Below are positions 11,012 through 29,820 of a stretch of 64,000 bases of DNA, piece after piece. The position numbers and the translations under genes are program-made. The stretch covers positions 135,480,210 to 135,544,209 of the forward strand of contig NC_068983.1 in the NCBI RefSeq assembly GCF_001194135.2, written 5' to 3'. The first letter of the stretch is position 1. Each line of letters starts with the position of its first letter. The stretch comes from Octopus bimaculoides (lineage: Eukaryota). Under the pieces are notes generated by a model that was not told the DNA's origin, did no database searches, and saw only the letters and a list, made by a program, of their open reading frames with translations.

Positions 11012-11989
11012 TCATCTAGCTATATGCTTCTTTTTAACATTTACTAATTGTAAGTTGGATGAAGATAATGATATTGGTTCATAATTTGCACTAAACAAAC
11101 TAACAGGATAAGGCTTAGAATTCTCAGAATTTTTCAGATGTTGGAATTTATCACAACTTACTAGTCTACGAATTGATGTAGGAGTTATGTAGCCAACTGG
11201 ATGAGATTCTGAATGAAGTGAGAAATGAGGAGAGAGGGATGAAGATGATAATAATGATTGCTCAGTTTGCTGTATATCAGAATTGTGTTCAAAGTTATCC
11301 AAAGATGTATTATGAGAAAGCAAGCTTGACTGAGTTAAATCTGCATCAGAAATGTCTGACCCTTGTTGTGTTGACAAAAAGTCCTGGTATCCATATCGAT
11401 GATCATCTGGACCAATCAGTTCTACTTTGATTTGTGGTTTGTTAAACAGGTCATCTTCATGGTTACTGTTGATATCATCTTGTTCATTACTAGTATCAGA
11501 AATTTCTTGTTTCACAACTTTTCTTTTTATCTCTGTTGGAAATTTGCTGGAAAGTACATTGGAATTTTCCTCAAGATTACGGTTGTAAAGAGTGATAGGA
11601 ATTACTTGAGAAACAGGAGTGAAATTATCTTGGCATGTAATTTGAGTGTTTGTGACGTCTGAGATAAGTCCTGATGAAGAGCAAGGTTCAGTAAGTATTG
11701 ACTCCAACATATCTGTTGGTACTGTTACTGAATTTTCTGCTATTTTTAATTGGTTGTTACAAAGCTGATCAAAACCCTGCATGTCAAGACACTGGGCAAT
11801 AATTTTCAATTGCGACAGGATGTTTTTATCTAGTTCCAGCACACCATCATACATATACTCACAGAAAGCTAATAGTGCTTCTTCACTCACAGTGGAAGGG
11901 AATGTTACAGCAGGCAAGTCAGAATGAAAAGCATTGTAAAATACAGGTAACACTTTGGGACATACAGCTCCAAAGACAATTTGATGAAC
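11012..11989 (-). CDS. BTB/POZ-domain protein, last coding exon (C-terminal half of BTB plus acidic/Ser-rich tail)
   Basis: Acceptor ttttgcag at 11990-11991, phase 0. Reads VHQIVFGAVCPKV...EALLAFCEYMYDGVLEL...LKIIAQCLDMQGFDQLC. 978 nt open to TGA at 11012-11014. Confidence 0.9.
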   Translation of the reverse strand, partial: VHQIVFGAVCPKVLPVFYNAFHSDLPAVTFPSTVSEEALLAFCEYMYDGVLELDKNILSQLKIIAQCLDMQGFDQLCNNQLKIAENSVTVPTDMLESILTEPCSSSGLISDVTNTQITCQDNFTPVSQVIPITLYNRNLEENSNVLSSKFPTEIKRKVVKQEISDTSNEQDDINSNHEDDLFNKPQIKVELIGPDDHRYGYQDFLSTQQGSDISDADLTQSSLLSHNTSLDNFEHNSDIQQTEQSLLSSSSLSPHFSLHSESHPVGYITPTSIRRLVSCDKFQHLKNSENSKPYPVSLFSANYEPISLSSSNLQLVNVKKKHIAR

Positions 11990-12428
11990 CTGCAAAAATT
12001 AATAGAATGAAAACAAAAGATTAACTTATCACCAGAGAGAACATATTCCAATCAAATCCCATTTGCCTCAACAGTTCCAAATTGTAACTTCAGTAGTCTC
12101 CACCCACCAATAAAAATACATTAAAAGAAAAGCATTCTGTGGTCATCAAAAGTGTCATTATCTTCCACCTAATAGTGGTGGTAATCAACAAAACAGTAGA
12201 AAGGCAATGGCATAATAAATGTCATTCATATTATTTGCTTATTTCCATCCACACTGTTTTCCTTTCTTAGGTCTTTTCACTTCAACACTTTGCTCAGGCA
12301 TTCATATCTGGAGTTACTTAACTGTACTTATAACTTCCAACAAAATAACGAAATAAAAATAAACACTATTTTAATTAACTCTTCTTCCAGAGAAGAATCT
12401 ACAAATATAGTCTGAAATGCAAACTTAC

Positions 12429-12759
12429 CATAACACTAACTGTACCATTGCTGATATAAGCATCACACAACCGACCAGCTTTCCATAATGATGACATGTT
12501 TGACATAACAGATGACTGATGGTTTGGAACTACAAGCATACGTTTCTCTTTTTGGTGAGATACATCTATTGTTGGACTCATTTGCAACTGTTTCTCAGAT
12601 TTAGGAGCAGTTTGTAGTTTCTGAATATTTTTTGATGAAAAACTTTGATTTTTGGAAGAGCTACTCGAGCAATCTATTGGTTGGGATCTAGTATCAGTAG
12701 TTGATGATGAAACAGCAGCTGGTTTGTCAATAACATGAGTTTGACCAGCTGAAATAAAA
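12429..12759 (-). CDS. BTB/POZ-domain protein, internal exon (start of BTB)
   Basis: Acceptor ttttttactag (phase 2), donor ATG|GTAAGT (phase 0). Encodes NHQSSVMSNMSSLWKAGRLCDAYISNGTVSVM, which joins in frame to VHQIV. Confidence 0.85.
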
Positions 12760-13819
12760 CTAGTAAAAAAAAAATATATAAATAAATAAAAGTCAAACAA
12801 TTATTGGCAGAAAAAAAATCAAACCAAATCATTTTTGATAATTTTCTACATCTACACTAAAAGTTATTTTAATAAAGAAAAGCAAATAGAATTGTATGAG
12901 AATTTTAGATAAACTTTCAAAAAGTAAAACTAATATCAAAAGATTTTATATCATGAAATAGTAAACAATCCATCACACAAAGAGAACTAGAGCTAAAGAC
13001 AGCCTTAAAATAATTTGATTTCATCAATGAAGTAAAGGCTAGTGAAGAATTATTACAGGTTTTACTGGGCAAGGTTCATAACTCACTCTACTTGGCTTAG
13101 CTGACAATAAGATCCATGTCTTCTAAATTTAAACTCCTAGGATTAAAGCAACAAGAACCACTCCAGTGTATCAAGTGATACAACATTAAACAAACTACTA
13201 CTAAAAAGGAGCAAGAAAGTGTATAACAGACAGTTTTACTGTTTACTCATTTGCTTTGTTAATCTTAGCAGTTTAGTAGTAGAGAATGTTACTGTCCACT
13301 TCAGGGTTTAATTGTAAATAAATGTGGAATATTTAATATTTTTATTTTATTTATTTACTCTTTTGGTATTTTTTTACTGAAATATTCTTCAGGTTGATTT
13401 ATTGAAGACAAACAGCTGTAATATCTTTTCTATGAACATTAGCAATGTAAGTGAATGGATCAAATTTAATTAAAATAGGACATGGCCTCAGTTCATTAAG
13501 AGTCCATATTTACAACAACTGTTAGTAGTAACTATTTAGTCTTCAGTAGCTTGTAGGAAGATTTGAGCACTGCACTGTTAAAAATTTTCAGTCTAATATT
13601 CATTGCCCTATGAATTGTCTTGTCTAGAAATCCAGCATTTTCCTTTAACAACAGAACAAGATACACATTATTACCCATTTAGCCAGGAAGAAAGCAACTT
13701 AACTTTTAGCCATCTATGATTTTTTTCCCAATAGATTAATGGCATGAATAATATGAATACATCTAAAAAAAAAAAGACAAATTTAAATCAATTAGTTATG
13801 AAACTCTGAAATCACTCAC

Positions 13820-14010
13820 GGTTTAGAGAAGTTATGTTTTTTAGGAACTTTTGCAGGTGTTGAAAATGATTGGTTTGCATCTGATAAGCTATTGATGGAT
13901 TTTGATGCTGAGGAGGAAAGATTTTTCCGCCGGTGTTCCACATCTAACTTATTTAAAGAATATGAAGGAGTAATTTGTTGATGGGCTGATTTAATCACTT
14001 GTGATTTTAC
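13820..14010 (-). CDS. Internal coding exon of BTB gene (Ser/Lys-rich linker)
   Basis: Acceptor ttccttgtag, donor CC|GTGAGT. 191 nt, phase 0 to 2, open frame VKSQVIKSAHQQ...HNFSKP, matching the next exon's phase. Confidence 0.75.
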
Positions 14011-14880
14011 CTACAAGGAATAAAAGAAGTAAATGAAAATCAAAATGGTTGGTTGTGAATATTACTTAACTTCAACATACCTTTCAATACTGAATAAAAC
14101 TACTATCAGTAATTCTTTTTTCTCACAATACCTCATGTGTTGCCAGTTTCTAATCTGATTTGGGCATGATTTTAATTCCCTGATAACAATACTGACTGAC
14201 ATGTCACTAAAGACACTGGGGAAGGCATAATTTTCAGATCCCCAATTAAAAATCTCAATTCTTTATTTATGTAAAAGATGTTATTTAAAGAATATGGAAA
14301 CATTACTTGGCATTCCAAAAAACTTAAGGTTAATATTGAAGAAAAAACAATGTTATTTTTCACAAAAATCATAAGGGAAAAAATAAAAGATATGTTAGTT
14401 TCTATTAACATCTGTCATTGCTGGGAAGCATCACAGTGTGAAACACATTATGCTTTTCCAAAGAATTGCCTACCTGAACTCAAGTCTACAAATTTTATTA
14501 ATAGTACAATTTAAGTGCATGACTCTATACCATGTATGGGCAACCTGCAACCCTCGACAAGTTTCTAGGTTACTAATTTCATACTAAGACAAATAAAATC
14601 AAGAACTGCAAAAAATTCAGTGTAAAGCAGGCAAGTAATATTTCATGCATGTGTTTTATCATGTGGACCTTTCCCACCTGGAAATGGTATGATGTGGCCC
14701 CCAGTTGAGGAAAAGTTGCCCATCCCTGTTCTATACTAATATAGAAAAAGTACATGATTCCTTCAGTGTAAATGTGGAAGGGTTCATATAGGGCAGCAGA
14801 GTGCTTATATAACTTTTCAATTGGATGAAACCCTTTTAACACAGGCAGCTGCTACTGAGAAATTTTAATATTATTTTTAC

Positions 14881-14945
14881 CGGAAGTTGATTAGATGTAT
14901 AGAGTTCTGAAGCAGTTTCAAGAATCTTGTCATACTCATTGGAAC
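14881..14945 (-). CDS. Internal coding exon of BTB gene; phase-1 entry exon
   Basis: Acceptor aaatttcag, donor CCG|GTAAAA. 65 nt, phase 1 to 0, open frame (x)SNEYDKILETASELYTSNQLP. No in-frame ATG, so an upstream phase-1 donor is needed. Confidence 0.7.
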
Positions 14946-15490
14946 CTGAAATTTAAATAAAACAGTGTCAAATACATTGATACAGTCTTCATATCATTAT
15001 TTACTGTTTACACTGATAATGAATATATTGCAAGTATTTTTTTTAATTTACAGGCATACAGATTATGGATCACTGTCCTTCAATAGTATTTAATTTAATA
15101 CCCCAATGGTTGAATAACCATATTTATTAAATATGAAATTATGTGTTGGTAAATTAACTCCATTATCATTCAGAATAATTTAGAAATGCAGTGGCTACAA
15201 AAGTTCTAAAATCAGTAAAGCTTGGTTTTAATTAACTCATAAGTCAACTTTTACTAGTGTAATTAAGGAACCAAATTAAATTGCTATCATCATTTTAAAC
15301 TCCACTTTTCAATGGTTATACGAGCCAGACAGAATCTGTCAAAGCAAATTATCTATGGCTTGATGCCTTTGTTGTCAACCAAGGTGTTATTTCCCTTTGG
15401 TCAGACATGGTTTCACAGAGGTTTAGAAACAAAGGACACCACTGGTATGGTGATGCTCATTTACAACTATCATGTGATGCAAACACACAT

Positions 15491-15640
15491 ATGATGGCCT
15501 TCTTTCGGTTTCTGTCAACCAAATCCAATCATAAAGCTTTGATCATTTCAGCACTATAGTAGAAGATATTTCTCAAGATGCCATTCAATAGGACTGGACC
15601 CCAAATCATGTCATTGGTAAGCAAACTTCTCAATCACTTA
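15491..15640 (-). mobile_element. Degenerate tRNA-derived SINE
   Basis: Diverged match to 46330-46499. Confidence 0.55.
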
Positions 15641-15944
15641 CAAAACCATTTGTAGTTTATAGGTTCAATAATTTTCATGTAATACTGCATGGAAGATTTA
15701 AAGATAACACTTCTTGAAATACTTTTTATTTTATTTTAGACGCATTTGTGATGAGAGAAAGAAAAGAGCTATTTATGAAAATTAAATGAAACAAGCAACG
15801 GGTTGGTTACAGACTGCTAACAGCTTATACCTACTTAGTCATTATGGAGTTACTTTTTGAAAATGTATGGATCATGAATATGAAATAATATCTCAATAAG
15901 CCAAAGTCGTAAGAGGCAAATTTTTACTGTTTCATCCGTCATAC

Positions 15945-16086
15945 TTTGAAGATAAAATGTACGTTTTCCTAAGTCTTTTTTCACGAGTTTTGAACGAATA
16001 TGACCATCAAAACCGTCAGAATCCACTTGTTCTCTAAGAAACCCATACATGCTGATGAGACAAGTGTAATAGTAAAAATTTACCAT
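15945..16086 (-). CDS. Possible short first coding exon of BTB gene
   Basis: ATG at 16086 (or 16050) open to candidate phase-1 donor CAAA|GTATGA at 15944. Lies in a CpG-retaining patch. No recognisable domain. Confidence 0.25.
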
Positions 16087-16528
16087 CGTTGGATCTTCAC
16101 TTTCCAAATAATTATCAGATATATTAATTATTAACGGTTTATTCCATTACAAAGAGCGACTATTATGAGTTCTCACTGATAACAATATATAATCTACATT
16201 TTAAAATTATTAGTAAGTCTTAAGTAATAATTTCAAAACTTCTATATTTGATACAAAAAAATTAAAAAAAGTAAAGTAAATGTTCATGCTTTCACGAATT
16301 GTTGAAAATTGTGAGTCCTTAACAATAGTAACTCTAGCAGCAAACGAAAAACAGATAAAGCACAAGTGTAACGTATTCTAAATCAGATATATTGTTCATA
16401 ATTCCTCGGTAAGCACAGTTAAATAACACAGTGAATGCTTGTTGTGGAATATCAATTTACACCAATGTGCTAGTTGTCTTACTTAGCCATTTTACTTAAA
16501 CCTTTGGGACAAAAAAAAAAAAAAAAAA

Positions 16529-17153
16529 NNNNNNNNNNNNNNNNNNNNNNNNNNNNNNNNNNNNNNNNNNNNNNNNNNNNNNNNNNNNNNNNNNNNNNNN
16601 NNNNNNNNNNNNNNNNNNNNNNNNNNNNNNNNNNNNNNNNNNNNNNNNNNNNNNNNNNNNNNNNNNNNNNNNNNNNNNNNNNNNNNNNNNNNNNNNNNNN
16701 NNNNNNNNNNNNNNNNNNNNNNNNNNNNNNNNNNNNNNNNNNNNNNNNNNNNNNNNNNNNNNNNNNNNNNNNNNNNNNNNNNNNNNNNNNNNNNNNNNNN
16801 NNNNNNNNNNNNNNNNNNNNNNNNNNNNNNNNNNNNNNNNNNNNNNNNNNNNNNNNNNNNNNNNNNNNNNNNNNNNNNNNNNNNNNNNNNNNNNNNNNNN
16901 NNNNNNNNNNNNNNNNNNNNNNNNNNNNNNNNNNNNNNNNNNNNNNNNNNNNNNNNNNNNNNNNNNNNNNNNNNNNNNNNNNNNNNNNNNNNNNNNNNNN
17001 NNNNNNNNNNNNNNNNNNNNNNNNNNNNNNNNNNNNNNNNNNNNNNNNNNNNNNNNNNNNNNNNNNNNNNNNNNNNNNNNNNNNNNNNNNNNNNNNNNNN
17101 NNNNNNNNNNNNNNNNNNNNNNNNNNNNNNNNNNNNNNNNNNNNNNNNNNNNN
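16529..17153. other. Assembly gap (N run)
   Basis: Run of N. Confidence 1.
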
Positions 17154-17241
17154 TAAGACGACTTCGTAAATTTCCCCTCAAAATGTTTATTTCGTCTTAT
17201 ATTTAACGTATAAGACAAAGCTTCACACGAAATATAGCATG

Positions 17242-17781
17242 TTAGAGGACAGAAATTACAAATAAAAACGACAAAGGGATATAAAGAAAGTAATTACTTT
17301 TTTTACGTTGCATTAATTTAGAACGATGGGAATAAGTTATTTCGGTGTCAAGCTCTGCAGGTAATTTCTTCGCTAATTTGGTTCTCTTTCTCAATACTAA
17401 GTTATGTCTCTCCATGAATCGACTACACCATGAAGCGGTGGCTTTGAAGTCTTTACAGTCCTCTTGATTTTCTTTTGCCCACTCGAGTGCCATATTGCGG
17501 ATTTTATTTCTTGATATACCGTATCCATTTTTTCGATATTCGCAAACTATATCTGCTAAATAATTTTCTAAATTTGGCCAATGTGCACTACCTCTTCTCA
17601 TTGCACATTTGCTCTTAGGGATTTTCTTTAATATATCTTCTTTTAATCTCCAATCTCTCACCACCTTCTCCGTTACACCATATTCTCGTGCAGCAGCGCA
17701 ATTATTGTGCTTCTTAGCATATGCTATTACGTTCAACTTAAACCCAGCTTGGTATTTCCTTCGTGTAGGTGTTTGCGCCAT
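17242..17781 (-). CDS. pogo/Tigger-type transposase N-terminus: Brinker-type HTH plus CENP-B (Tc5) HTH; DDE domain absent
   Basis: RRKYQAGFKLNVIAYAKKHNNCAAAREYGVTEKVVRDW is Brinker DBD-like; HWPNLE...ISRNKIR...FKATASWCSRFMERHNLVLRKRT is CENP-B HTH-like. Similarity stops before the expected GNxDETP motif. TAAGACG/CGTCTTATA pogo-end-like motifs at 17154-17215. Confidence 0.8.
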   Translation of the reverse strand: MAQTPTRRKYQAGFKLNVIAYAKKHNNCAAAREYGVTEKVVRDWRLKEDILKKIPKSKCAMRRGSAHWPNLENYLADIVCEYRKNGYGISRNKIRNMALEWAKENQEDCKDFKATASWCSRFMERHNLVLRKRTKLAKKLPAELDTEITYSHRSKLMQRKKSNYFLYIPLSFLFVISVL

Positions 17782-18359
17782 GACGAGCCTTTATGATATC
17801 TTGAAGTCGTAGAAACAATATTTACAACGCATGTGACACCAAGATAACAACTAACAATCTCGCGCAAGCGCTATGAGTCTGATTCACCCAACCCAATTAC
17901 TGTAGACGTTAGACCGTCATTTCTAAGCTCTTCTCGGCGTTTAAGACGACGCATCACGATATCGTTTCCCCAGTTTTAAATACAGTGGTTAGTGTGCATT
18001 TTCACCACAGAACCACATCCTTTTAATTGAAAATTAAAATAATCTCGAAATAAAATAACAATGAAATATAAAAATAATCTCTAAACAAATTATTTTTTTT
18101 TCTTTTCTAATTTAAATAGTGCTACCTACCATATTCCCGGTGCCTTTATCTAGCGAGTAATAAATTAGTTTAATTTTAACTGGCAATAATTATAGAACAA
18201 GTATCAAAATATCTTTCATGAATTTATGGGTATCACCTATTTTAGAACTGAAGTCACAAGCCCTATAAGTAGGTACACATCTCAAGTTAAAACGATTCAG
18301 TCAAATAAATAGCCATACCAACAACATTCTCACATAATGAGTTTGTAAATTTTTTTTTA

Positions 18360-19496
18360 CTAACCAATAGGCATATCTTTCATTTGGAGGGCACGTCCAA
18401 ATAACAACTGGGTGTGATTAACGAAATTCAAACACATACTAGGCGTTATGACGGTTACACTTTCGTCAATCAACCTTTCCACAAATCTAAGTTTCCGTTC
18501 AGATTTTGATAATACATTTTGTGGATCACCTGCTGTCATTTCGGAAAGCTGATTGGCTTCCTTCTGTTTGAGTTGAGTCTTAATCACACTCCAGACACTC
18601 TCAAATGGATTTAACATGGGTGAATAAGGCGCAAGACGAAGAAGTGTTGCTCCTTCGAACTCACTTAAGACGTTTTCTAAATCCGAGTGGCAAGAGGCAT
18701 TGTCAATAACCATCACAATTTGTTCACACGAAGTACCATTGCCAATAACTTTTTGCAACAGGTCTCGTACCCATACACTGCACGAGTCACTCCGGTAAGT
18801 TCCTCTTATTCTTTGGAAATCGATCAATCCAGCTTGACAAAGAGCCCCAATCATATGGATAGTCGGACCTTTGGAAGAAGGCAGATGCGCAACTGCACGT
18901 GTTCCTTTCGTTAACCCTCCTTTACTTTTTCTAAGGAAAAGGTTGACATTTGACTTGCTGATATATACAAAGAACTTTCCTTCAGCAGATGATTTCATCA
19001 CATTCTCGATATACTCCTTCCTCAAAAGCTTGTTTTTGTGATTGTTGACTGTCTCTGGGCATAAATGTACTTGCTTCAATGAAATTATTCTTCCATCTAG
19101 ATGACTGGCTATAGTTTGTTCGGACACAATCAATCCATACTTTGAAAGTAAATGTTCGCAAAGATTCTTCAATGTTAATTGTGGACAATCGTTTAACCAC
19201 TCAATAAGTGACTCGATATGTTCATGCTCTATCTTCTTCACCTTATCACGGATACCTCCACGGTGCAAATGTGATGCACGATCTCTGCGTACCCAATTAT
19301 ATGCAGTTGTCTTCTTAACGCCATGTGCTGTAGCAATAGATTTCATATCTTTTCCTCGTTCAGCTGCAGACAGTACACGCTTTCGAGTTTCGAGTGCCGA
19401 CTTCTTGTATGGTCCTCGCTTGCTTCCTCGTTTGACACCTCGTGAACTAGCAGTACTTTCGAACTGACTTTCATTATCTGTAAGCAAACGTAACAT
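18360..19496 (-). CDS. IS630/Tc1-family transposase ORF (378 aa), intact frame, first catalytic Asp lost
   Basis: HTH region, then YISKSNVNL where DE(T/S) is expected, VIDNASCH, and LAPYSPMLNPFE (D-33-E spacing by my count). Perfect 16-bp inverted repeat AAATTAAAATAATCTC at 18031-18046 and 19627-19642. In-frame phase-1 acceptor tttgcttacag at 19478-19479. Confidence 0.85.
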   Translation of the reverse strand: MLRLLTDNESQFESTASSRGVKRGSKRGPYKKSALETRKRVLSAAERGKDMKSIATAHGVKKTTAYNWVRRDRASHLHRGGIRDKVKKIEHEHIESLIEWLNDCPQLTLKNLCEHLLSKYGLIVSEQTIASHLDGRIISLKQVHLCPETVNNHKNKLLRKEYIENVMKSSAEGKFFVYISKSNVNLFLRKSKGGLTKGTRAVAHLPSSKGPTIHMIGALCQAGLIDFQRIRGTYRSDSCSVWVRDLLQKVIGNGTSCEQIVMVIDNASCHSDLENVLSEFEGATLLRLAPYSPMLNPFESVWSVIKTQLKQKEANQLSEMTAGDPQNVLSKSERKLRFVERLIDESVTVITPSMCLNFVNHTQLLFGRALQMKDMPIG

Positions 19497-20385
19497 TGTA
19501 GGAGTAAGTTAAATGATGCAATGTATTCCAATTTAAAACTACTCAACGTAAAATCAAGCAGTTCAAAACACAAACGTCCGCTATGTTTTTATAAAAAAAA
19601 ACAAAAAAAACTATTTAATTTGCTCTGAGATTATTTTAATTTGTTTTGAGGTTATTTTAATCTCGAAGCAAATTAAAATAATTTGCATTATCTCGCTTCG
19701 AGAATATTTAAAGTTGCACTTGAAAGGATTTACACTTTAACATGTCCGGCAATATAAGTGATCAAAATTCTCAAAAAGGAATCGGTTTATTAATGCAAGT
19801 AACAAAACATTATTTAAATGAAGAAGTCATAATTATACTCTATTATATATATACATATATATATTTATTTTTCACGGATGTAATATTCACCCCTCTCCAC
19901 CTAACTATGTGTATAGAGTAGATATGAGCTTTGGCTGCTATTTCTAAAAACCAAATGACTGCGTAGAGGCTCTCCTTTTCGCTCGGGTTTTCTCGTGATT
20001 CCGTTTTACTAAGTAGTAAATCATCGTTTTATGGTATCCATTTAGTTACCGATCGTCTTTGCGAAATAGAAACCAGTCACAGGACGCAAACTTCTGATCA
20101 TTTAGTCGCTATTTTAATGACTCTACTAGCTTCGCTTCCAACGAAAGTATGGAGAGGGAGAAAAGTAATTTACTTCAGAGAAAGAAACGAAGTTATTTTA
20201 CACAGTTTGAGCAGTTAATTTTCAGAAAGCAATTTTAAATAAATAACATTAATTTTGAGACATTCTGATTGAATTAGAAAGAAAGTACATTAAAACAGAT
20301 ATAAACTTATAATTTCCTCTTGTTTGGCGTCCGCGGAGGAATTCTTTTCTTTTGAATCTGTGCTACGGTCTACTTGTTTTGTTGG

Positions 20386-21164
20386 NNNNNNNNNNNNNNN
20401 NNNNNNNNNNNNNNNNNNNNNNNNNNNNNNNNNNNNNNNNNNNNNNNNNNNNNNNNNNNNNNNNNNNNNNNNNNNNNNNNNNNNNNNNNNNNNNNNNNNN
20501 NNNNNNNNNNNNNNNNNNNNNNNNNNNNNNNNNNNNNNNNNNNNNNNNNNNNNNNNNNNNNNNNNNNNNNNNNNNNNNNNNNNNNNNNNNNNNNNNNNNN
20601 NNNNNNNNNNNNNNNNNNNNNNNNNNNNNNNNNNNNNNNNNNNNNNNNNNNNNNNNNNNNNNNNNNNNNNNNNNNNNNNNNNNNNNNNNNNNNNNNNNNN
20701 NNNNNNNNNNNNNNNNNNNNNNNNNNNNNNNNNNNNNNNNNNNNNNNNNNNNNNNNNNNNNNNNNNNNNNNNNNNNNNNNNNNNNNNNNNNNNNNNNNNN
20801 NNNNNNNNNNNNNNNNNNNNNNNNNNNNNNNNNNNNNNNNNNNNNNNNNNNNNNNNNNNNNNNNNNNNNNNNNNNNNNNNNNNNNNNNNNNNNNNNNNNN
20901 NNNNNNNNNNNNNNNNNNNNNNNNNNNNNNNNNNNNNNNNNNNNNNNNNNNNNNNNNNNNNNNNNNNNNNNNNNNNNNNNNNNNNNNNNNNNNNNNNNNN
21001 NNNNNNNNNNNNNNNNNNNNNNNNNNNNNNNNNNNNNNNNNNNNNNNNNNNNNNNNNNNNNNNNNNNNNNNNNNNNNNNNNNNNNNNNNNNNNNNNNNNN
21101 NNNNNNNNNNNNNNNNNNNNNNNNNNNNNNNNNNNNNNNNNNNNNNNNNNNNNNNNNNNNNNNN
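20386..21164. other. Assembly gap (N run), possibly hiding an exon
   Basis: Run of N; see findings for flank evidence. Confidence 1.
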
Positions 21165-22849: not shown

Positions 22850-23404
22850 GGAAAAGTTTCCGTTAATGTTGATATTATTACAAGGAACGAGATCGAAAAA
22901 AAAAATAGTGCAACGGATTTAAAAAAAAAAAGGTGTAGGAAACGAATATGAAAACAAAAATTCCAGGAAAGCAACAGGGAGAGGCCTTCGGAAAATTCAC
23001 AAGATATAATGTTTTACCTTCATAACTTTTAGGAAAATGGTTTTTTTTAAATGAAATTTTATATAAATACCTTTCAGTACGATTATAAAGAAATTTATGG
23101 GGAAAATCTTTTCTGGGGTGGTGGGGAGAGGACTTCGGAAAATGTACAAGATCCGATGTTTTTACCTCGTAACTTTCAGGAAAATGTATATCTTTCTACT
23201 TCACACCTACGTAGGAAACGAATCTGAAAACAAAAATGCGCGGAAAGCAACGGGGGTGGGAGAGGACTTTGCAAAATTCTGAGTTTTTCCCTTGTAACTT
23301 AGAGGAAAATATAATCCTTTTGAAATCACAAATTAGGCTTTTCCTCAGCAACTTAGATGCTAAACATTCCTTTGAAGGGTTTGGGTCCTTACTTCTAATA
23401 TATG

Positions 23405-23438
<34 letters not shown>

Positions 23439-23625
23439 TATATCTATCTATATAATATATAGTAGAAGGACCTGAACCTTTCAAAGGGACGTTTAGCATC
23501 TAAGTTCTTGAGGAAAACCCTTATTTGTGACTTCAAAAGGATTATATTTTCCTCAAAGTTAAGAGGGAAAAACATCGGATCTTGTGAATTTTCCAAAGGC
23601 CTCTCTCCACCCTGTTGCTTTCCCC
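22850..23625. mobile_element. Foldback/MITE family copy with internal subrepeats and an inverted arm pair around a microsatellite
   Basis: Same subrepeats as 35716-36340 (ggagaggacttcggaaaattcacaagatcc; taacttttaggaaaat). Arms 23243-23397 and 23460-23622 are inverted around a TA/CA tract. Confidence 0.7.
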
Positions 23626-24159
23626 ACCTTTTTTACACCAGTTACACTATTTTTTTAAAATCCATTTGTCAACATTAACCAAAGTTTCAAATCTTAAATT
23701 CCTGAGATACAACAATGGCTTGAACAAAGGCCAGTGGATTCTTCTGCAACATTATAATCCAAATTCGGTCTACATTGGTAACTTTCAAAACATCCCTACA
23801 TTAAAAACATCCAAAATATCCCTATATTAAAACCACAAACATATATGGCTTCAGATGTGCACCAGAATTTGATACTCTGCATTCACCTCGCACAAATAGC
23901 CCTATCTTCATGTGAGTGTTCTCATTTTGTCTTACACAAACCTACTTTTTACATTGTTTTATATAAAAGAGATTTGATATGAACGTTAGTTAGTAGTAAT
24001 AGAAACTATATATGTTAGTTGCCCCCTTCCCACATGGAAGATACTTCTACCGATAATTAGTCGTGTTGTACAAATACTTGAAATGAGAAATGGTCACATT
24101 GTAAGACCCACTTGAAGAGTGATAGAACTCTGTAAATCTCAATATAGCATTAAGTACAC

Positions 24160-24262
24160 GGGCATATGGCGTAGTGGTCAAGAGTGCGGGCTACTAACCC
24201 CAAGGTTCCGAGTTCGATTCACGGCAGCGACCTGATTAATAATAGTAATAATAATAATAATA
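24160..24262 (+). mobile_element. Short tRNA-derived SINE (Pol III A/B boxes, (AAT)n tail)
   Basis: A box TGGCGTAGTGG and B box GAGTTCGATTC; acceptor stem does not pair cleanly; AAT-repeat tail follows. Confidence 0.6.
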
Positions 24263-25134
24263 TTTTCTGTATTCCAGTTTGTGCCTATGATCCATTTAGG
24301 CATATGTTTGGTAGTATTGGACAAAACTTTTCAGCAAGGGGAACTTCCCACATGATAGTAGTAAAAAGAGATCAGCAATCATCTGTTTGGGCTTGGTATC
24401 TCTATATTCCATAGCATGCTTCTTTTTTTTCTTTTTTGCATGACTTAGCATATTGTGCATCAGTTCAGGTAACACAAGGAGTGCATTAGATAAGTTCCAT
24501 ACAAATTTGATTTGAAAGTAAATTTATGCATGTTGTTCAGCAACAATGCTTCCTTTCCTCCTGAGTCTTGTTTTGTTCTTAACAAGAGAGTCTATTATTA
24601 TATACATACATATATCATCATTTTCCATGCTAGCATGGGTAGGACAGTTTGAGAAGATTCAACTAGTTGAAGGACTATGCCTTGCTCCAATGTTTCATTT
24701 TTGGCATAGTTTCTATGGTAAGATGTCCTTCCTAAACCAACTACTTTACAGAGAGTATTGAGAGCTTTATTGTTATAGAGGTTTGTCTTGAGCAAGAAAA
24801 GGCAACGTGTTAAGTCCTACAATATCATCAATTTGAGCAGTGATAGTATATACTAAAGGTATAGAGTGGACAATAAACAGATGGATGCATGCACAAAACA
24901 ATAGGCAAGGGAGGTGTGTATGCAGAGTTTGTGCACAAAGTCAGGTCTTCTGTAGTACCATCAGTTGATATGACCTTCTGTCATCTCCTTTGTCAGGTGA
25001 AACACGTGTGTGTGTGTACAGGATGTATGTATGTATGTGTGTATATATATATATATAGATAAGTGCTGATACACGAAACTCTTGGAGTTTGAGTCACTCT
25101 GTTGCTTCTGCTAAATATTAATAAAAATATACTT

Positions 25135-26285
25135 CATCATCATCGTTTAACGTCCGTTTTCCATGCTGGCATGGGTTGGACGGTTCGACTGAGGTCTGGA
25201 GAGCTAGTGGCTGCACCAGACTCCAATCTGATCTGGCAATGTTTCTGCAGCTACATGCCCTTCCTAACGTCAACCACTCCGAGAGTGTAGTAGGTGCTTT
25301 TTACGTACCACTGGCACAGGAGCCAGCCAGGCGGGCCTGGCATCAAACACATTCGGACAGTGCTTTTTATGTGCTACTGGCATGGGAGCCAGTCATGGAG
25401 TACTGGTATCAGCCACATTTGGATGATGCTTTTTATGTGCCACTGGCACAGGAACCAGTCAGGGGCTACTGGCATTGGACACGTTCAGATGGTGCTTTTT
25501 ATGTGCCACCAGCATGGGAGACAGTCAGACAGACCTGACATTGACCACATTCGGATGGTGCTTTTTACATGCCACTGGCATTGGAGCCAGTCTGGGGGTA
25601 CTGGCATTGGCCACATTCAGTTGGTGGTTTTTATATGCCACCAGCACGGGAGCCAGTCAGGCGGATCTGGCATTGACCACGTTCGGATGATGCTTTTTAC
25701 GTGCCACTGGCACGGGAGTCAGTCAGGGGGAACTGGCCATAGCTATGATATTTGTTTTACCTGACTCAACAGGTCTTCTCAAGCAAATCATATCGCCTGA
25801 CACATTAGGGGTATTCTTAACAGGGCCAGACATGTGTGGCTGCGATCTCACTTTAGTTGTGAGGTTTTCTCAATCAGCATATCTAGAAAGGTCCAGGTCT
25901 CCTGTCATTGCCCCCACTACAGACTTTGTTACCTAGGTAGCGGAAGCTATTAACTACTTCAAGTTTCTTCTGCAGGCATGTGATGGAATCTGTTTTCTGT
26001 ACATCTTCAGTGTTTATTACCCCAGTGTATCTGCCACACACAAAAACTATTTTCCCAGTTAGCCTTCCTTTGATATTGCTGCATTTTTTATGTGTCTGTA
26101 GCTTGTACTGGGTACATCATATGGAGCTTCTACTCATGCCTTTTCTACAGATCAAGCAGGGCCATCAACCTGAAGGGGATTGTGATTTGACAGCCTTCCT
26201 ACTTATTAAGGCCTTGGTTTTTGCTAGGTTAACCCTAAGGCCCTTCAATTCTAGACCTTGATTCCACACCCTAAACTTCGTCTCC
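25135..26285 (-). mobile_element. 5'-truncated RTE-type LINE with tandem repeats in its 3' UTR
   Basis: (GAT)n tail at 25135. 25930-26285 is the reverse complement of the 40430-40770 family. Confidence 0.8.
25294..25745. repeat. 66-bp tandem repeat, about 7 diverged units
   Basis: Units start at 25294, 25360, 25426, 25492, 25558, 25624 and 25690 (exact 66-bp period). Confidence 0.9.
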
Positions 26286-28300
26286 ATTTCTGGTAGTGAC
26301 TCATCCAATAAATTTTCTTGAGTCAGAAAAAAAGCAGGCACTCAGCTATTAGATATTATAGAGGTATATTATTATTATTTATAATAGCTATGTCTGATGA
26401 TTGTTACATTTGCCTTTCCAATTTTGGCATGAAACCATTCAGTAACATTAATTGGTTGTCATGAGACAAAAATATAATGTAAAGAAGAAGAGCAGCAGTG
26501 GTGGTGGTGGCGGCGGAGCATCATAGCCATGTTTTGAGAGGAATTTAGGGTTTGAATAATTCATCTCTGGAAACATTATCTTAACCCTTATTCAGGGACC
26601 TTTTGAGTGAGATGGGCTACTTAACCTGAAGAAAATTCTAACTGGGCCCCACCTGCAAGGTCATGCACTGTTTATCTTGATATGAGATCACAATGTTGTG
26701 CACATATGGTTGTGATGCATGTGCCTGATGTACCCTTATCTGACAGGTAGTCATGATGGGTATGTTGGGCTTCATATATTTATACCCCAGTGTCAGTTTG
26801 ATGGCATGCACTGCTCTCTCACACAATAATATCTTTTATTTTCCACCAGGGTGACGGATGAAGGGGACAATATAAAGACAAAAATAAAGTGTAAAGGTTT
26901 ACATATAATGCAATGATTAAAAAAATGTATACTTGCTATACATTACAAAATGTGAGGTATACATAGTATATGACAGTAAGAGAGAAAAAAAATGGTGATA
27001 GTGATGGTGTCCATCATACAAGATTCCCCTGAATACAAAAAACAAGTGCCTTCTCGAACTCCTTTCCTCCAATTCACAGGTAGTTTTCCTGTTTGCATCA
27101 CCATATATGTATATAGGAGGTGGGAGAGATGTGCCAGGTATTTGTAAACAAACTTTAGTGGGTCACAAATGGAAGGTGACCTTACACAGTATTATGTGGC
27201 ATGTGCCAAATTTTAACTTTTTCTTTCAAACTTATCAAAATGTGTGTGCGCTTGTATGCCAGTGCTGCCTGACTGACTCCCGTGCCTTTTTTATTGGATT
27301 CCAGTTCAGACACATTCATATAATTATAGGATGAAAGAGTAGTTTCAAGTTTGAAACCTACTATATGGATGGACATTTTTCTAAATGCTGAAGTATATTT
27401 AAGCAACTATGTGCAATATGTGTGTCACTGGGAGAAAAAAAGTGTTTTATATATGTATGTATTCCTGCTTGGGAAAAAGTACAAGCTCAAAGTTCTAGGA
27501 AGAACTATCTATATTTTCTTGTTGCAATGTAAGCAGTATCAATTCATCTTGGACCACATTACTATACAAGAGTACTTTTACTGGGTGCTTGCTTCATTTA
27601 AAATCAGATCAATTGCATGATTATGCTGCACCCCACATGAAGTAATATGTTCATATTTATCATCCATTGTCAAGCCTCTCTTATATCCTATTTTTCTTTG
27701 CTGTGTATATTGCCATCTTATTTTGTCAGACCAATAACTATTTATCAAACACATAACCTTCTTGAAGTTATAGATGTTTTGATAATTTCCATGAGGAATT
27801 TCCCACTTATATAATGAAATATTGTATTTTATTCTATTATACCAAATTTATATTTATGTATACAATTGTCATCTAAGAAATTGCTTTCTGAGCAAGTCAT
27901 GTCTCTACAGTACAATATGGATCCTATCGATTTATTTCAATCTCCAATACTTTATAATTATTTAATGCTGAAATATGAAGGCAAATCTTGATTGTATACT
28001 TATTAGTAAGTTGCTATAAGTTATAACAAAAAGACATCCACATCCAGACAAAAAGGGCAATCTCTGAGTACAGTGTGCCACTTTCACGTTTGTTGATACC
28101 AGTTTGGCAACTGCAAATCTCTTCATCTGCCCTGTACAATAGCCAAATTGGCCGTCCCCGTCCTTAATTGACTACAGCAAACAAGTATATTTAATTGGTC
28201 ACCCTGTGCGATTCGCGTACCCTACGCTACATCACTATTTTGCTATTTGCAATGACATGTTTTTGTAACTACTGAAAAGTTTTCCAAATGTACTATTCAC

Positions 28301-28387
28301 CTGCTTCAATTATTTCTTGACATGAGATCATTTTTGAGTCATTATCTGGGGAACATACTTGACGGTTAGCAGGATTTACGAAAGTTC
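28301..28387 (-). CDS. Candidate symmetric (phase 1-1) linker exon following the THAP exon
   Basis: Acceptor catggtag, donor GCAG|GTGAAT. 87 nt open frame GTFVNPANRQVCSPDNDSKMISCQEIIEA. Polypyrimidine tract is weak. Confidence 0.5.
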
Positions 28388-29567
28388 CTACCATGATCAA
28401 TAATACAGTAATTAAACGCATGTCATAATAATGACATTCTATCATACGAATGCTTATGAGCAATTGTATTTCCTATAATATTGAACAGTGTTTTCTGTTC
28501 TATATAGTACTTCTAGAAAACATTTCTTCGAGACTTCAATCACGTTCTCTCAATTAGACTCTTGCAAGGTTTGTGGAAATATTTCATTTATTTTGTATAA
28601 GACGTTCGTTTAATTGAATCCACCGGTAACAGTCGGGTCCTCGGAACCCAATAGCAAATACAGAACTCGTAGAAACATACAACTCTTTAATTATTCTGGT
28701 TTTGTCTACTTTATATTATTTAATTATTTTCATTTATATCAATGCTATTTTATAGAAAAAAAGACATTTTTCTTACTGAAACAATAAACGATATCCAACT
28801 GCACGCCATCTCCGGTATATTTTGCAAATTGCAATAAGCCTTTTTCTTACAAACAACACTAAAAGGCTGCGAAATATCGAGTTTCTCTTCACAAGCCATG
28901 CAGTGAATACGTGCTTCACCCATTCAATATGCTGAACGTTGTTTACGCAGTCCGGTGCTTAGCTAGTCAAGTAATAACGAGTTTTGTGAAAGTGAAAATG
29001 GTACTTTATACTGTAACATCGCTCAAATTTATATTTCATTTTGAACAACATAAAATAAAATTTTCTGATCACCGATGAAATTACACCAAAACTTTGAAAT
29101 AAAGATTTTTTTGCAATCCACTACGAATAATTGGCAGCCGACTGCCAAAGCTGAACTTTAAAAAAATGAAATGGGTACGTTATATTCAAAGATCGCCAAT
29201 CAAAAATATTAGTTGGTGAACATTCACACAATAATTTCTATTTTACATTTCTGTTGGAATAATAAACGCCTAATTTTACCTCAATCAAAAAATTTAAAAA
29301 ATTTAATGTTGTTACAAGAGTCGAGTTACGTCCCATTATACTCAAACGACAAAACTTTAGACTCACTTCTATCGGTTACGCTCCAAAAAAATCCCCTAAG
29401 CTAAATAAGTTCGTACGGAGACGTCGACGAAAAAAATTCCTCCGCGCCCACAAAACAAGGAAAATATACAATTTAGTAATAGAAAGTTAACGAAACATAG
29501 ATATAGATTAACTCGTTTACGAGCATGAGTTTGTGTTTTAAGGAAGCTAGGGAATAAACAATCGTAC

Positions 29568-29820
29568 CTTGGATTGGAAGATTCAGAGTCGGAATGCTGC
29601 TGTGCAGTAAGCTATTCTGGTTATCAACAAAATGGAGACTACAAATGCTATGCTCCCTAGTTATGTGCTTCACGTCGTTGGCATCGAGGGGGTCGTAACC
29701 AGCCAATCTAACCCAGATTGTTCGGAGCTGTATGTTGTCCCAAGGTAGTAGAAAAAATGTTATTGACTTGTCTATGCGACTGTTCGAGTGACAGCCTTTA
29801 ACAATACAGTCGGACGGCAT
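29568..29820 (-). CDS. THAP zinc-finger domain, first coding exon
   Basis: MPSDCIVKGC...TFFLLPWD..LRTIWV...SICSLHF...LLHSSIPTLNLP fits the C2CH THAP signature with conserved P, W, F and P. Donor CAAG|GTACGA, phase 1. Confidence 0.85.

What the first reader, a model, noticed from the sequence alone, without database searches (positions are those of the whole stretch)
11012..29820. In-frame THAP-BTB fusion protein (predicted 634 aa)
Exons 29820-29568, 28387-28301, 14945-14881, 14010-13820, 12759-12429 and 11989-11012 have canonical GT-AG ends and compatible phases (1,1,0,2,0), summing to 1905 nt from ATG to TGA. THAP is a C2CH DNA-binding domain shared with P-element-type transposases, and the THAP exon otherwise has no stop-containing partner except the Tc1 exon. 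THAP N-terminal to BTB is not an architecture I recognise. A single phase match has roughly a 1-in-3 chance probability, so this is only moderate evidence.
Basis: partly seen in the sequence, partly recalled or inferred. Interest (0 to 1): 0.75.

Follow-up and report, generated by a model that had tools for sequence, protein, structure and literature searches.

The report
Octopus BTB gene with swappable DNA-binding exons
The THAP and BTB exons do belong to one annotated octopus gene, but the 634-aa model contains an unsupported exon, and THAP is only one of several alternative DNA-binding first exons, some captured from transposons, that join the same BTB-encoding exons.

Summary
The window is Octopus bimaculoides gene LOC106872006, on the minus strand. 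Five of the six exons coincide exactly with RefSeq exons. Exon 2 (28387-28301) is in no annotated model, is one of 595 equally compatible open AG..GT cassettes in that intron, evolves near-neutrally and is absent from Argonauta. Both assembly gaps are intronic, and their flanks are collinear with a gapless O. sinensis locus.

THAP and BTB are linked. RefSeq isoform X2 is THAP + Tc1 exon + BTB exons (976 aa). An O. vulgaris isoform joins THAP directly to the BTB exons (609 aa; 605 aa here). In Argonauta the THAP exon, its donor and its phase are conserved and give a 600-aa open frame.

The architecture is not new. THAP-BTB recurs in cephalopod paralogues and in abalone, and was noted for octopus in 2023. 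The more interesting point is that four 5' modules (CG-1, THAP, a catalytically dead solitary Tc1 transposase, and a pogo-type HTH) all end in phase 1 and join the same BTB exons. This resembles Drosophila lola or mod(mdg4) turned around. Junction-level RNA evidence for O. bimaculoides could not be obtained here.

The parts
48403..48915 (-). Alternative first coding exon with its own ATG, encoding a CG-1-like DNA-binding domain (171 aa, phase 0 at its end). It is the first coding exon of RefSeq isoform X1.
   Evidence: The exact rebuild of XP_014774296.1 (P0026) uses it. Pfam CG-1 E=2.1e-9, 37.6 bits against a 23.5 cut-off. It is 98.8% aa identical in O. sinensis and 85.5% in Argonauta. dN/dS 0.09.
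38308..38377 (-). 70-nt mini exon that follows the CG-1 exon and brings that branch to phase 1.
   Evidence: Needed for the exact rebuild of P0026. Conserved in O. sinensis at 22/23 aa, not detectable in Argonauta.
29568..29820 (-). Alternative first coding exon with its own ATG, encoding the THAP C2CH zinc finger (253 nt, ends in phase 1).
   Evidence: The exact rebuild of RefSeq X2 uses it. Pfam THAP 35.5 bits. The signature C5-X4-C10-X49-C60-X2-H63 plus P26, W36, F64 and P77 can be read directly from the translation. It is 97.6% aa identical in O. sinensis and 81% in Argonauta, with the identical donor CAAG|GTACGAT. dN/dS 0.13. The nucleotide conservation island with Argonauta is 29828-29552.
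28301..28387 (-). Not supported as an exon.
   Evidence: Absent from all annotated isoforms. One of 595 equivalent cassettes in the intron. dN/dS 0.78, and no better conserved than its flanks. No match in Argonauta.
18365..19496 (-). Solitary Tc1/IS630-like transposase ORF (HTH + DDE_3). RefSeq uses it as an internal exon, 19477-18365 (1113 nt, phase-neutral). O. vulgaris CAI9720208.1 uses it as a first coding exon from its own ATG at 19496 (1132 nt, ends in phase 1). The donor lies inside the last Gly codon, just before the transposase stop codon.
   Evidence: Exact rebuilds of P0001 and P0026. Pfam DDE_3 E=1e-17. Present at the orthologous site in O. sinensis (87.6% aa), absent in Argonauta. 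The first catalytic Asp is lost: consensus VDESN reads ISKSN here and IGKSN in O. sinensis. dN/dS is 0.76 overall (not different from 1, p=0.28), 0.54 for the HTH part and 1.08 for the catalytic part. The nearest relative outside this locus is 57% identical.
18022..18118 (.). Degenerate terminal-inverted-repeat remnant on the low-coordinate side of the Tc1 ORF. Its partner is at 19590-19685.
   Evidence: Inverted pairs I1, I2, I5 and I7, 25-51 nt long, 71-88% complementary.
19590..19685 (.). Partner inverted-repeat remnant on the high-coordinate side of the Tc1 ORF.
17298..17781 (-). Alternative first coding exon with its own ATG, encoding a pogo/Tigger-type DNA-binding region only (BrkDBD/psq-like HTH + HTH_Tnp_Tc5), with no DDE domain. 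484 nt, ends in phase 1. Not in the O. bimaculoides RefSeq models, but used by O. vulgaris CAI9720209.1.
   Evidence: P0030 maps to 17781-17293 at 98% identity and then to the common exons. Joined to the common exons it gives an open 682-aa frame, 670 identical columns against P0030. Pfam BrkDBD E=2.4e-14, HTH_Tnp_Tc5 E=9.6e-12. dN/dS 0.24. Absent in Argonauta.
14881..14945 (-). Common exon c1 (65 nt). Its acceptor takes every phase-1 upstream module.
   Evidence: Shared by all isoforms. Conserved in O. sinensis and Argonauta.
13820..14010 (-). Common exon c2 (191 nt), a Ser-rich linker.
   Evidence: dN/dS 0.19.
12429..12759 (-). Common exon c3 (331 nt): linker plus the first third of the BTB domain.
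   Evidence: dN/dS 0.11.
11012..11989 (-). Common last coding exon c4 (978 nt including TGA): the rest of the BTB domain plus a roughly 240-aa Ser/acidic tail.
   Evidence: dN/dS 0.09. The BTB region matches solved ZBTB17/BCL6, ZBTB9, ZBTB18, ZBTB7A and PLZF BTB domains, E from 9e-6 to 4e-3.
16529..17153 (.). Assembly gap A, in the intron between the pogo-HTH exon and c1.
   Evidence: Flanks are collinear with O. sinensis L002 36208-37349 and 37932-39156. The missing piece is 582 nt there and holds no domain.
20386..21164 (.). Assembly gap B, in the intron between the THAP exon and the Tc1 ORF.
   Evidence: Flanks are collinear with L002, ending at 33598 on one side and starting at 34191 on the other.

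Best explanation
The region is Octopus bimaculoides gene LOC106872006, minus strand, roughly 48.9 kb to 11.0 kb. It belongs to a mollusc family, expanded in cephalopods, of transcription-factor-like proteins.

Four constant 3' exons (14945-11012) encode a linker, a ZBTB-like BTB/POZ domain and a Ser/acidic tail. Upstream lie alternative 5' coding exons. Each has its own ATG, each ends in phase 1, and each encodes a different DNA-binding module:
- a CG-1-like domain (48.9 kb, plus a mini exon at 38.3 kb)
- THAP (29.8 kb)
- in the genus Octopus only, a pogo-type HTH (17.8 kb)
- in the genus Octopus only, a solitary, catalytically dead Tc1 transposase (19.5 kb), which models also use as a phase-neutral internal exon

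THAP-BTB is therefore a genuine product of the locus: about 605 aa when spliced directly, 976 aa if the Tc1 exon is included.

Inferred mechanism, not shown here: alternative promoters choose the DNA-binding module, which sets target specificity. The shared BTB lets isoforms and paralogues homo- and heterodimerise and recruit co-regulators.

Shown: exon structure, frames, domains, conservation, selection and family distribution.
Inferred: promoter use, splicing ratios, DNA binding and dimerisation.
For: - Exact rebuilds of both RefSeq isoforms from window exons.
- Four O. vulgaris isoforms share an identical C-terminus of 524-525 aa, with unique N-terminal modules of 84-386 aa that map to the four window modules. 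That annotation added alternative forms with PASA from Iso-Seq and RNA-seq data (PMC10700109).
- Each module joined to the common exons gives an open frame in the window.
- Pfam assigns a DNA-binding domain to every module.
- Selection: dN/dS is 0.09 for CG-1, 0.13 for THAP, 0.24 for the pogo HTH and 0.09-0.19 for the common exons (pooled test against neutrality p about 1.5e-12). Tc1 is at 0.76, not significant.
- Between O. bimaculoides and Argonauta, only the CG-1 exon, the THAP exon and c1-c4 survive as collinear conserved islands.
- The Argonauta THAP exon has the same length, donor and phase, and gives a 600-aa open frame with the BTB exons.
- Paralogues show the same isoform logic. LOC106872008 and LOC115209617 have CENP-B_N/Tc5 or STPR N-termini on an identical 471-474 aa C-terminus.
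- Two mRNA-like contigs from a cuttlefish relative share 2951 nt of 3' sequence at 97.6% identity but have unrelated 5' ends, one encoding THAP and the other a FAR1/ZSWIM3_N domain.
- An exhaustive search places THAP, FLYWCH, CENP-B_N/Tc5, FAR1 or DUF3504 in front of an internal BTB in family members from Octopus, Argonauta, cuttlefish and Haliotis.
- The BTB is closest to ZBTB transcription-factor BTB domains.
Against: - No junction-spanning RNA reads from O. bimaculoides could be examined.
- The O. bimaculoides RefSeq models contain the Tc1 exon in both isoforms, and neither joins THAP directly to c1.
- Transcript support for the O. vulgaris isoforms is inferred from the published annotation method, not seen directly.
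- The two cuttlefish-type contigs come from different sequencing runs and are 97.6%, not 100%, identical, so they may be different individuals or species.
- The AlphaFold model of the BTB region was of low confidence (pLDDT 49), so there is no structural confirmation beyond sequence matches.
- DNA binding and dimerisation are untested.
Confidence: 0.8

Rival explanations
1. In O. bimaculoides the THAP exon splices only to the Tc1 exon at 19477. The only THAP product is then the 976-aa THAP-Tc1-BTB protein of RefSeq X2, and the Tc1 part is a domesticated, obligatory exon.
For: Both O. bimaculoides RefSeq isoforms contain 19477-18365. The acceptor TTACAG|AT and the donor G|GT are conserved in O. 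sinensis. The ORF is intact in three Octopus species, and I estimate the chance of that under neutrality at about 0.06. No close paralogous copy exists; the best outside hit is 57% identical. The HTH part has dN/dS 0.54 against 1.08 for the catalytic part.
Against: O. vulgaris has isoforms that skip Tc1: the 609-aa THAP-BTB form and the 719-aa CG-1-BTB form. Argonauta conserves the THAP exon, its donor and its phase, yet has no Tc1. Overall Tc1 dN/dS of 0.76 is not different from 1 (p=0.28). The first catalytic Asp is replaced by different residues in the two species. TIR remnants are still present, which fits an old intronic insertion that is optionally exonised or was chained in by the gene predictor.
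Confidence: 0.2
2. The THAP exon is not part of the BTB gene. It would be a separate nested THAP-only gene or a relic of a P-element-like transposon in the intron, and the in-frame join would be a coincidence propagated by gene predictors.
For: A phase match alone has a 1-in-3 chance. Read-through past the donor gives a 115-aa ORF, 29820-29473. THAP domains are common in transposons.
Against: Exon-limited conservation ends about 16 nt past the donor. Donor and phase are identical in Argonauta. dN/dS is 0.13. An uninterrupted mRNA-like contig encodes THAP + CG-1 + BTB in one 901-aa ORF in a decapodiform relative. THAP-BTB proteins are annotated independently in Argonauta, cuttlefish and Haliotis. 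No transposase partner lies next to the THAP exon.
Confidence: 0.05
3. The reader's 634-aa model is a real, perhaps minor, isoform that includes the 87-nt cassette 28387-28301.
For: The cassette is open, phase-neutral and has AG/GT ends that are conserved in O. sinensis, where it also stays open.
Against: It is in no annotated isoform of four species. There are 595 equivalent cassettes in the same intron, and it fails a modest splice-site filter. Three of its four substitutions are non-synonymous, and its conservation equals that of the flanks. It is absent in Argonauta.
Confidence: 0.05

Closest known systems
RefSeq LOC106872006 (O. bimaculoides XP_014774296.1 and XP_014774298.1) and its orthologues: O. 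sinensis LOC115209547, O. vulgaris CAI9720207-209 and an Argonauta hians model
   Same: It is this gene. The O. vulgaris 609-aa isoform is the direct THAP-BTB product, with 591 identical columns out of 609 against the window-derived 605-aa protein.
   Different: No annotated model contains exon 28387-28301. The O. bimaculoides models insert the Tc1 exon. The O. bimaculoides annotation lacks the direct THAP-BTB form, the form starting at the Tc1 ATG and the pogo-HTH form that are annotated in O. vulgaris.
Octopus THAP and CENPB transcription factors carrying BTB/POZ, reported by Mukherjee & Moroz 2023 (PMC10027918)
   Same: That paper states that most Octopus THAP and CENPB proteins are associated with a BTB/POZ domain and that Aplysia CENPB proteins are not. 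The THAP+BTB architecture in octopus is therefore already in print.
   Different: The paper treats BTB as a transposon-derived component. It does not mention isoforms, alternative first exons or shared BTB exons.
Drosophila lola and mod(mdg4): multi-isoform BTB transcription-factor genes (established knowledge; a Dorn & Krauss 2003 reference appears)
   Same: One gene, constant BTB exons, and many alternative exons that each supply a different DNA-binding module (zinc fingers or FLYWCH). The shared BTB allows isoforms to pair in combinations.
   Different: The orientation is reversed. Here the variable DNA-binding modules are 5' first exons, which implies alternative promoters, and the BTB sits in the constant C-terminal half. 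The BTB matches ZBTB-type domains in PDB; whether it is the insect TTK type was not tested. No trans-splicing is needed because all modules are on the same strand and upstream. Only 3-4 modules are present, against 20-30 in Drosophila.
Host-transposase fusion genes formed by transposase capture through alternative splicing (Cosby et al. 2021, Science; from my own knowledge, not read here)
   Same: A DNA transposon inserted in an intron donates its DNA-binding domain, or its whole ORF, through a splice donor to downstream host exons. The pogo-HTH exon (HTH only, dN/dS 0.24) and the Tc1 ORF (donor just before its stop codon) fit this route, and both are younger than the split between Octopus and Argonauta.
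   Different: That work covered tetrapods and mostly KRAB or SCAN host domains. Here the host is a mollusc BTB gene, and several captures sit side by side at one locus. For Tc1, purifying selection is not demonstrated.
Vertebrate ZBTB (BTB-zinc finger) transcription factors such as ZBTB17/Miz-1, BCL6 and PLZF
   Same: The nearest solved BTB sequences, and the same general design of a DNA-binding domain plus a BTB dimerisation domain.
   Different: In ZBTB proteins the BTB is N-terminal and the DNA-binding part is a C-terminal C2H2 array. Here the BTB is internal or C-terminal and the DNA-binding part is an N-terminal THAP, CG-1 or HTH domain. In the exhaustive search the internal-BTB family separates cleanly from the N-terminal-BTB hits.

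Membership tests
THAP domain (PF05485) | C2CH zinc signature C-X2-4-C-X35-53-C-X2-H | tested here: met
   C5-X4-C10-X49-C60-X2-H63, read from the exon 1 translation.
THAP domain (PF05485) | Profile score above the curated cut-off, plus the conserved Pro, Trp and Phe residues and the C-terminal AVPTIF-like box | tested here: met
   35.5 bits against 23.9, covering profile positions 1-87. P26, W36, F64 and the 'SIPTLN' box are present and conserved in Argonauta.
THAP domain (PF05485) | Sequence-specific DNA binding | not testable with these tools
   Needs EMSA, DAP-seq or ChIP.
BTB/POZ domain (PF00651) | Profile score above the curated cut-off over nearly the full domain | tested here: met
   26.4 bits against 20.5, profile positions 3-107 of 110. 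Family members score up to 72 bits. PDB sequence matches to ZBTB17/BCL6, ZBTB9, ZBTB18, ZBTB7A, PLZF and KLHL3.
BTB/POZ domain (PF00651) | BTB fold and dimer interface | tested here: inconclusive
   The AlphaFold2 model built on a 10-sequence alignment had mean pLDDT 49.2. The order of helices and strands is BTB-like, but the model is too weak for a fold search.
lola / mod(mdg4)-type multi-isoform BTB genes | Constant BTB-encoding exons shared by all isoforms | tested here: met
   Identical C-termini of 524-525 aa in four O. vulgaris isoforms and 891 aa in the two O. bimaculoides isoforms. All map to window exons 14945-11012.
lola / mod(mdg4)-type multi-isoform BTB genes | Each variable exon encodes a distinct DNA-binding module | tested here: met
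   CG-1, THAP, HTH+DDE_3, and BrkDBD+HTH_Tnp_Tc5.
lola / mod(mdg4)-type multi-isoform BTB genes | BTB at the N-terminus with variable 3' exons | tested here: not met
   The variable modules are 5' exons with their own ATG codons, and the BTB lies in the constant 3' half. The locus works like these genes but is not a member of that family.
Host-transposase fusion (transposase capture) | A transposase-derived domain joined in frame to host exons by splicing, at an orthologous site in several species | tested here: met
   The Tc1 and pogo-HTH modules are in frame with c1. Both are present at the same position in O. sinensis and are used in O. vulgaris proteins, and both are absent in Argonauta.
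Host-transposase fusion (transposase capture) | Purifying selection on the captured domain | tested here: inconclusive
   Pogo HTH dN/dS is 0.24, based on only 8 substitutions. Tc1 is 0.76 overall (p=0.28), 0.54 for its HTH part (p=0.08) and 1.08 for its catalytic part. The divergence, dS about 0.06, is too low for a firm test.
Host-transposase fusion (transposase capture) | Fusion transcripts actually expressed | not testable with these tools
   Supported only indirectly, by RefSeq models and by the PASA/Iso-Seq-based O. vulgaris annotation.
Active Tc1/mariner transposon | Intact DDE/D catalytic triad and matching terminal inverted repeats | tested here: not met
   The first catalytic Asp is replaced by Ser here and by Gly in O. 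sinensis. The inverted-repeat arms are only 71-88% complementary.

The most novel reading that the evidence does not exclude
LOC106872006 and its tandem paralogues are reversed lola-type genes. In this reading, one constant BTB half is served by a row of alternative promoter-plus-first-exon units. Each unit encodes a different DNA-binding domain, mostly derived from transposons: THAP, CG-1-like, pogo HTH, a Tc1 transposase, and elsewhere in the family CENP-B_N, STPR, FLYWCH, FAR1 and DUF3504. New units were added stepwise by intronic transposon insertions. The pogo HTH and Tc1 units arrived after the split between Octopus and Argonauta. This would give cephalopods a set of BTB transcription factors that can pair in combinations. 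It would also catch transposase capture at several stages within a single locus: constrained (pogo HTH), ambiguous (Tc1), and ancient (THAP).
Probability: 0.6. Interest if true: 0.55.

Novelty: already known. Interest (0 to 1): 0.3.

Why it matters
As submitted, the finding (a THAP-BTB protein) is an already annotated gene with an architecture already noted for octopus, so it mainly serves as a correction of a gene model. The locus has wider value as a compact example of how new transcription factors can arise. One BTB half is combined, through alternative first exons, with several unrelated DNA-binding domains, two of them apparently captured from DNA transposons within the genus Octopus. If RNA data confirm this, it would extend transposase capture by splicing from vertebrates to molluscs. 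It would also provide a reversed counterpart to the Drosophila lola and mod(mdg4) design. Finally, it shows that counts of THAP, CENPB and psq transcription factors in cephalopods may count isoforms of the same genes more than once.

Tried and rejected
1. A profile search with a 10-sequence alignment of the BTB region in the word-indexed protein collection returned only ten short exon fragments and added nothing on family breadth. The exhaustive representative search replaced it.
2. AlphaFold2 on the BTB region gave mean pLDDT 49. I judged it too weak and ran no fold search.
I did not try any other route.
4. An exact look-up of the 719-aa isoform P0004 found nothing, because only the longest product per gene is on record.
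5. I considered that assembly gap A might hide a further coding module, because the O. sinensis equivalent has a 104-codon open stretch. It has no ATG-initiated ORF of that size and no Pfam match, so I rejected the idea.
6. I searched the window with all 229 collected family proteins for further unannotated DNA-binding modules. Only the known modules were hit.
7. I considered Tc1 as a recent multicopy element. The nearest relative outside the locus is 57% identical, so I rejected this.
8. I considered Tc1 as clearly domesticated. This is not supported: dN/dS is not different from 1, and the catalytic Asp is lost to different residues in two species.

Full report
**1. Checking the observation**

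They start with ATG, end with TGA, have no internal stop, and have AG/GT at every junction. Pfam finds a THAP domain at residues 5-80 (35.5 bits, cut-off 23.9) and a BTB/POZ domain at residues 289-391 (26.4 bits, cut-off 20.5). THAP lies entirely in exon 1. The BTB spans the last two exons.

**2. Identity of the locus**

A homology search with the joined protein shows that the window is Octopus bimaculoides gene LOC106872006. Mapping annotated proteins back to the window and rebuilding the coding sequences exactly gives the two RefSeq isoforms:
- X2 (XP_014774298.1, 976 aa): 29820-29568 + 19477-18365 + 14945-14881 + 14010-13820 + 12759-12429 + 11989-11012.
- X1 (XP_014774296.1, 1086 aa): 48915-48403 + 38377-38308 + the same Tc1 exon + the same four 3' exons.

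The exception is exon 2 (28387-28301), which is in no model from any species.

**3. The assembly gaps**

This was the point I was asked to test first. Both gaps (16529-17153 and 20386-21164) fall in introns. The gapless O. sinensis orthologous locus (L002) is collinear with the window along the whole gene. About 24 kb aligns in long blocks at a mean identity of 91.4%.

The flanks of gap A map to L002 36208-37349 and 37932-39156. The missing piece is thus 582 nt there, against an estimated 625 N. The flanks of gap B map to positions ending at 33598 and starting at 34191. Orientation is the same on both sides of both gaps. The O. sinensis sequence equivalent to gap A has a 104-codon open stretch but no domain. 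Neither exon order nor reading frame depends on the gaps.

**4. Exon 2 is not supported**

- The intron from the THAP donor to the acceptor at 14945 contains 595 open AG..GT cassettes of 45-300 nt that would keep phase 1.
- In O. sinensis its AG and GT are conserved and it stays open. However, it is 83/87 nt identical against 74/80 for its flanks, and three of its four differences are non-synonymous, giving dN/dS about 0.78.
- It has no counterpart in Argonauta.

By orthology with O. vulgaris CAI9720207.1 (609 aa), the direct THAP-BTB product in this window is 605 aa, with 591 identical columns out of 609.

**5. THAP and BTB belong to one gene**

Besides RefSeq X2 and the O. vulgaris 609-aa isoform, the strongest evidence is comparative.
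- Between O. bimaculoides and Argonauta hians (L003), the only collinear conserved islands across the gene are the CG-1 exon, the THAP exon (29828-29552, within 8-16 nt of its boundaries) and the four common exons.
- The Argonauta THAP exon is also 253 nt, starts with ATG, and ends with the same donor, CAAG|GTACGAT. Joined to the Argonauta common exons it gives a 600-aa open frame whose last 515 residues equal the annotated Argonauta protein.
- Between O. bimaculoides and O. sinensis, the THAP exon has dN/dS 0.13, similar to the CG-1 exon (0.09) and the common exons (0.09-0.19). The pooled test against neutrality gives p about 1.5e-12.
- An uninterrupted 901-aa ORF carrying THAP, CG-1 and BTB sits on a 3486-nt contig from a sequencing run of a cuttlefish relative. 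It is 92% identical to an Acanthosepion pharaonis model. Its size and its lack of introns indicate an mRNA.

**6. What the locus really is**

The O. vulgaris annotation carries four isoforms with an identical C-terminus of 524-525 aa and unique N-termini. These N-termini map to four different places in the window:
- CG-1-like domain, 48915-48403, plus a mini exon
- THAP, 29820-29568
- a Tc1-like transposase read from its own ATG, 19496-18365
- a pogo-type HTH (BrkDBD + HTH_Tnp_Tc5), 17781-17298

The domain assignments come from Pfam. In the window each module ends in phase 1 and gives an open frame when joined to exon 14945. As an internal exon, the Tc1 segment (19477-18365, 1113 nt) is phase-neutral.

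The O. vulgaris annotation added alternative forms with PASA from Iso-Seq and RNA-seq data (PMC10700109). These isoforms are therefore probably transcript-based, but I could not inspect the reads.

Paralogues behave the same way. LOC106872008 (O. bimaculoides) and LOC115209617 (O. sinensis) have CENP-B_N/Tc5 or STPR N-termini on an identical 471-474 aa C-terminus. Two mRNA-like contigs of the cuttlefish type share 2951 nt of 3' sequence at 97.6% identity but have unrelated 5' ends, encoding THAP or a FAR1/ZSWIM3_N domain.

**7. The transposon-derived modules**

The pogo-HTH and Tc1 modules are present at the same positions in O. sinensis and absent in Argonauta. They were therefore gained in the Octopus lineage or lost in Argonauta.

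The pogo module contains only the DNA-binding part of a pogo transposase. It is 97.5% identical between the two Octopus species, with dN/dS 0.24.

The Tc1 ORF:
- It still has degenerate inverted-repeat arms at about 18022-18118 and 19590-19685.
- It has lost its first catalytic Asp. The consensus VDESN reads ISKSN here and IGKSN in O. sinensis.
- It has no relative closer than 57% identity outside this locus.
- Its dN/dS is 0.76, not different from 1 (p=0.28). The HTH part is at 0.54 (p=0.08) and the catalytic part at 1.08.
- The chance that the ORF stayed open in both lineages under neutrality is about 0.06 by simulation.
- Its splice donor lies inside the last Gly codon, just before the transposase stop. 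Both this donor and the acceptor at 19477 are conserved in O. sinensis.

I read Tc1 as an old, dead, solitary insertion that is optionally exonised. Whether it is functionally domesticated remains open.

**8. The family and how new this is**

An exhaustive HMMER search with the constant part against 1.84 billion representative proteins gave only 141 hits. The best 45 or so have an internal or C-terminal BTB. The remainder are ordinary proteins with an N-terminal BTB, of the ZBTB/KLHL type.

Pfam scans of 20 family representatives, with organisms, found these domains in front of the BTB:
- THAP in P0055 and P0064 (Argonauta), P0066 (cuttlefish) and P0076 (Haliotis rufescens LOC124116851, which has at least 14 isoforms)
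- FLYWCH
- CENP-B_N/Tc5
- FAR1/ZSWIM3_N
- DUF3504

Mukherjee & Moroz 2023 (PMC10027918) already state that most Octopus THAP and CENPB proteins carry a BTB/POZ domain. They do not mention isoforms or shared exons. The THAP-BTB architecture is therefore already annotated and published. The organisation into alternative first exons appears not to have been described in the literature I could search.

**9. Likely mechanism**

Shown:
- The gene structure, frames, domains and selection pattern.
- The THAP module has an intact C2CH signature: C5-X4-C10-X49-C60-X2-H63, with P26, W36, F64 and P77.
- The BTB is closest in sequence to solved ZBTB transcription-factor BTB domains: ZBTB17/BCL6, ZBTB9, ZBTB18, ZBTB7A and PLZF.

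Inferred:
- Alternative promoters select the DNA-binding module, and with it the target sites.
- The shared BTB mediates homo- and heterodimerisation among isoforms and paralogues and recruits co-regulators, as in ZBTB, lola and mod(mdg4) proteins.

An AlphaFold model of the BTB region had low confidence (pLDDT 49) and I did not use it.

**10. Verdict**

The arithmetic, the domains and five exons are right. Exon 2 is not supported.
The link between THAP and BTB is real, but the 634-aa product is not the supported one. The architecture is already known. The locus is a gene with several alternative first exons, not a single fusion.
- Interest as submitted is low to moderate.
- The most novel reading still open is a reversed lola-type gene that gains DNA-binding modules by transposase capture. 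It is plausible, and junction-level RNA data would test it.

Noticed in passing
window 18365-19496 (-), with inverted-repeat remnants at 18022-18118 and 19590-19685: A solitary Tc1/IS630-like transposase ORF is intact in three Octopus species at the same intronic site. It has lost its first catalytic Asp, to different residues in two species. Its splice donor sits just before its stop codon. The nearest relative outside the locus is only 57% identical.
   Followed up: yes
window 17298-17781 (-); the ORF runs on to 17242: A pogo-type HTH-only exon (BrkDBD + HTH_Tnp_Tc5) is not in the O. bimaculoides RefSeq models. O. vulgaris CAI9720209.1 uses it as a first coding exon. It joins the BTB exons in frame and appears to be under purifying selection (dN/dS 0.24).
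   Followed up: yes
L002 (O. sinensis) 24665-24916 and 25796-26047: The THAP exon is present twice in O. sinensis, in a tandem duplication of about 1.1 kb. Copy A is 97.6% aa identical to the window (dN/dS 0.13) and copy B 95.2% (dN/dS 0.44). The window has a single copy. This could be a real duplication or an assembly artefact.
   Followed up: partly
window 25293-25737: A tandem array with a 66-nt unit (6.7 copies, 76-81% matches) lies in a relatively GC-rich stretch of the THAP-to-Tc1 intron. Translated, it gives the repetitive pseudo-ORFs at 25176-25764. Related peptide motifs ('AFYVPPA..') appear near 5.7 kb in the window and at L002 39547-39816. Nearby intron sequence (25283-25133) matches several places in the Argonauta locus, so this region may carry a dispersed repeat family.
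   Followed up: no
L001 (SRR8281692 contig, 3486 nt) and L004 (SRR30931884 contig, 4155 nt): Two mRNA-like contigs from a cuttlefish relative are 97.6% identical over 2951 nt of 3' sequence, which encodes CG-1-like and BTB domains. Their 5' ends are unrelated and encode THAP or a FAR1/ZSWIM3_N domain. The switch occurs at '...G|KPSTLYETSSPDW', inside the end of the THAP domain.
   Followed up: partly
P0076 and cluster members (Haliotis rufescens LOC124116851, H. cracherodii): Abalone has a THAP-BTB gene of the same family with at least 14 annotated isoforms. The architecture therefore predates cephalopods within molluscs.
   Followed up: partly
window 38308-38377 (-): The 70-nt mini exon that brings the CG-1 branch to phase 1 is conserved in O. 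sinensis but not detectable in Argonauta. The annotated Argonauta protein has other sequence at that position.
   Followed up: no
O. vulgaris protein names (CAI9720208.1 'E3 ubiquitin-ligase ZNRF4', CAI9720209.1 'Pogo transposable element-like 6'): Isoforms of one gene carry unrelated automatic names in the O. vulgaris annotation. In surveys that count by domain, the same locus could be counted as a THAP, a CENPB/psq and a transposase gene.
   Followed up: no
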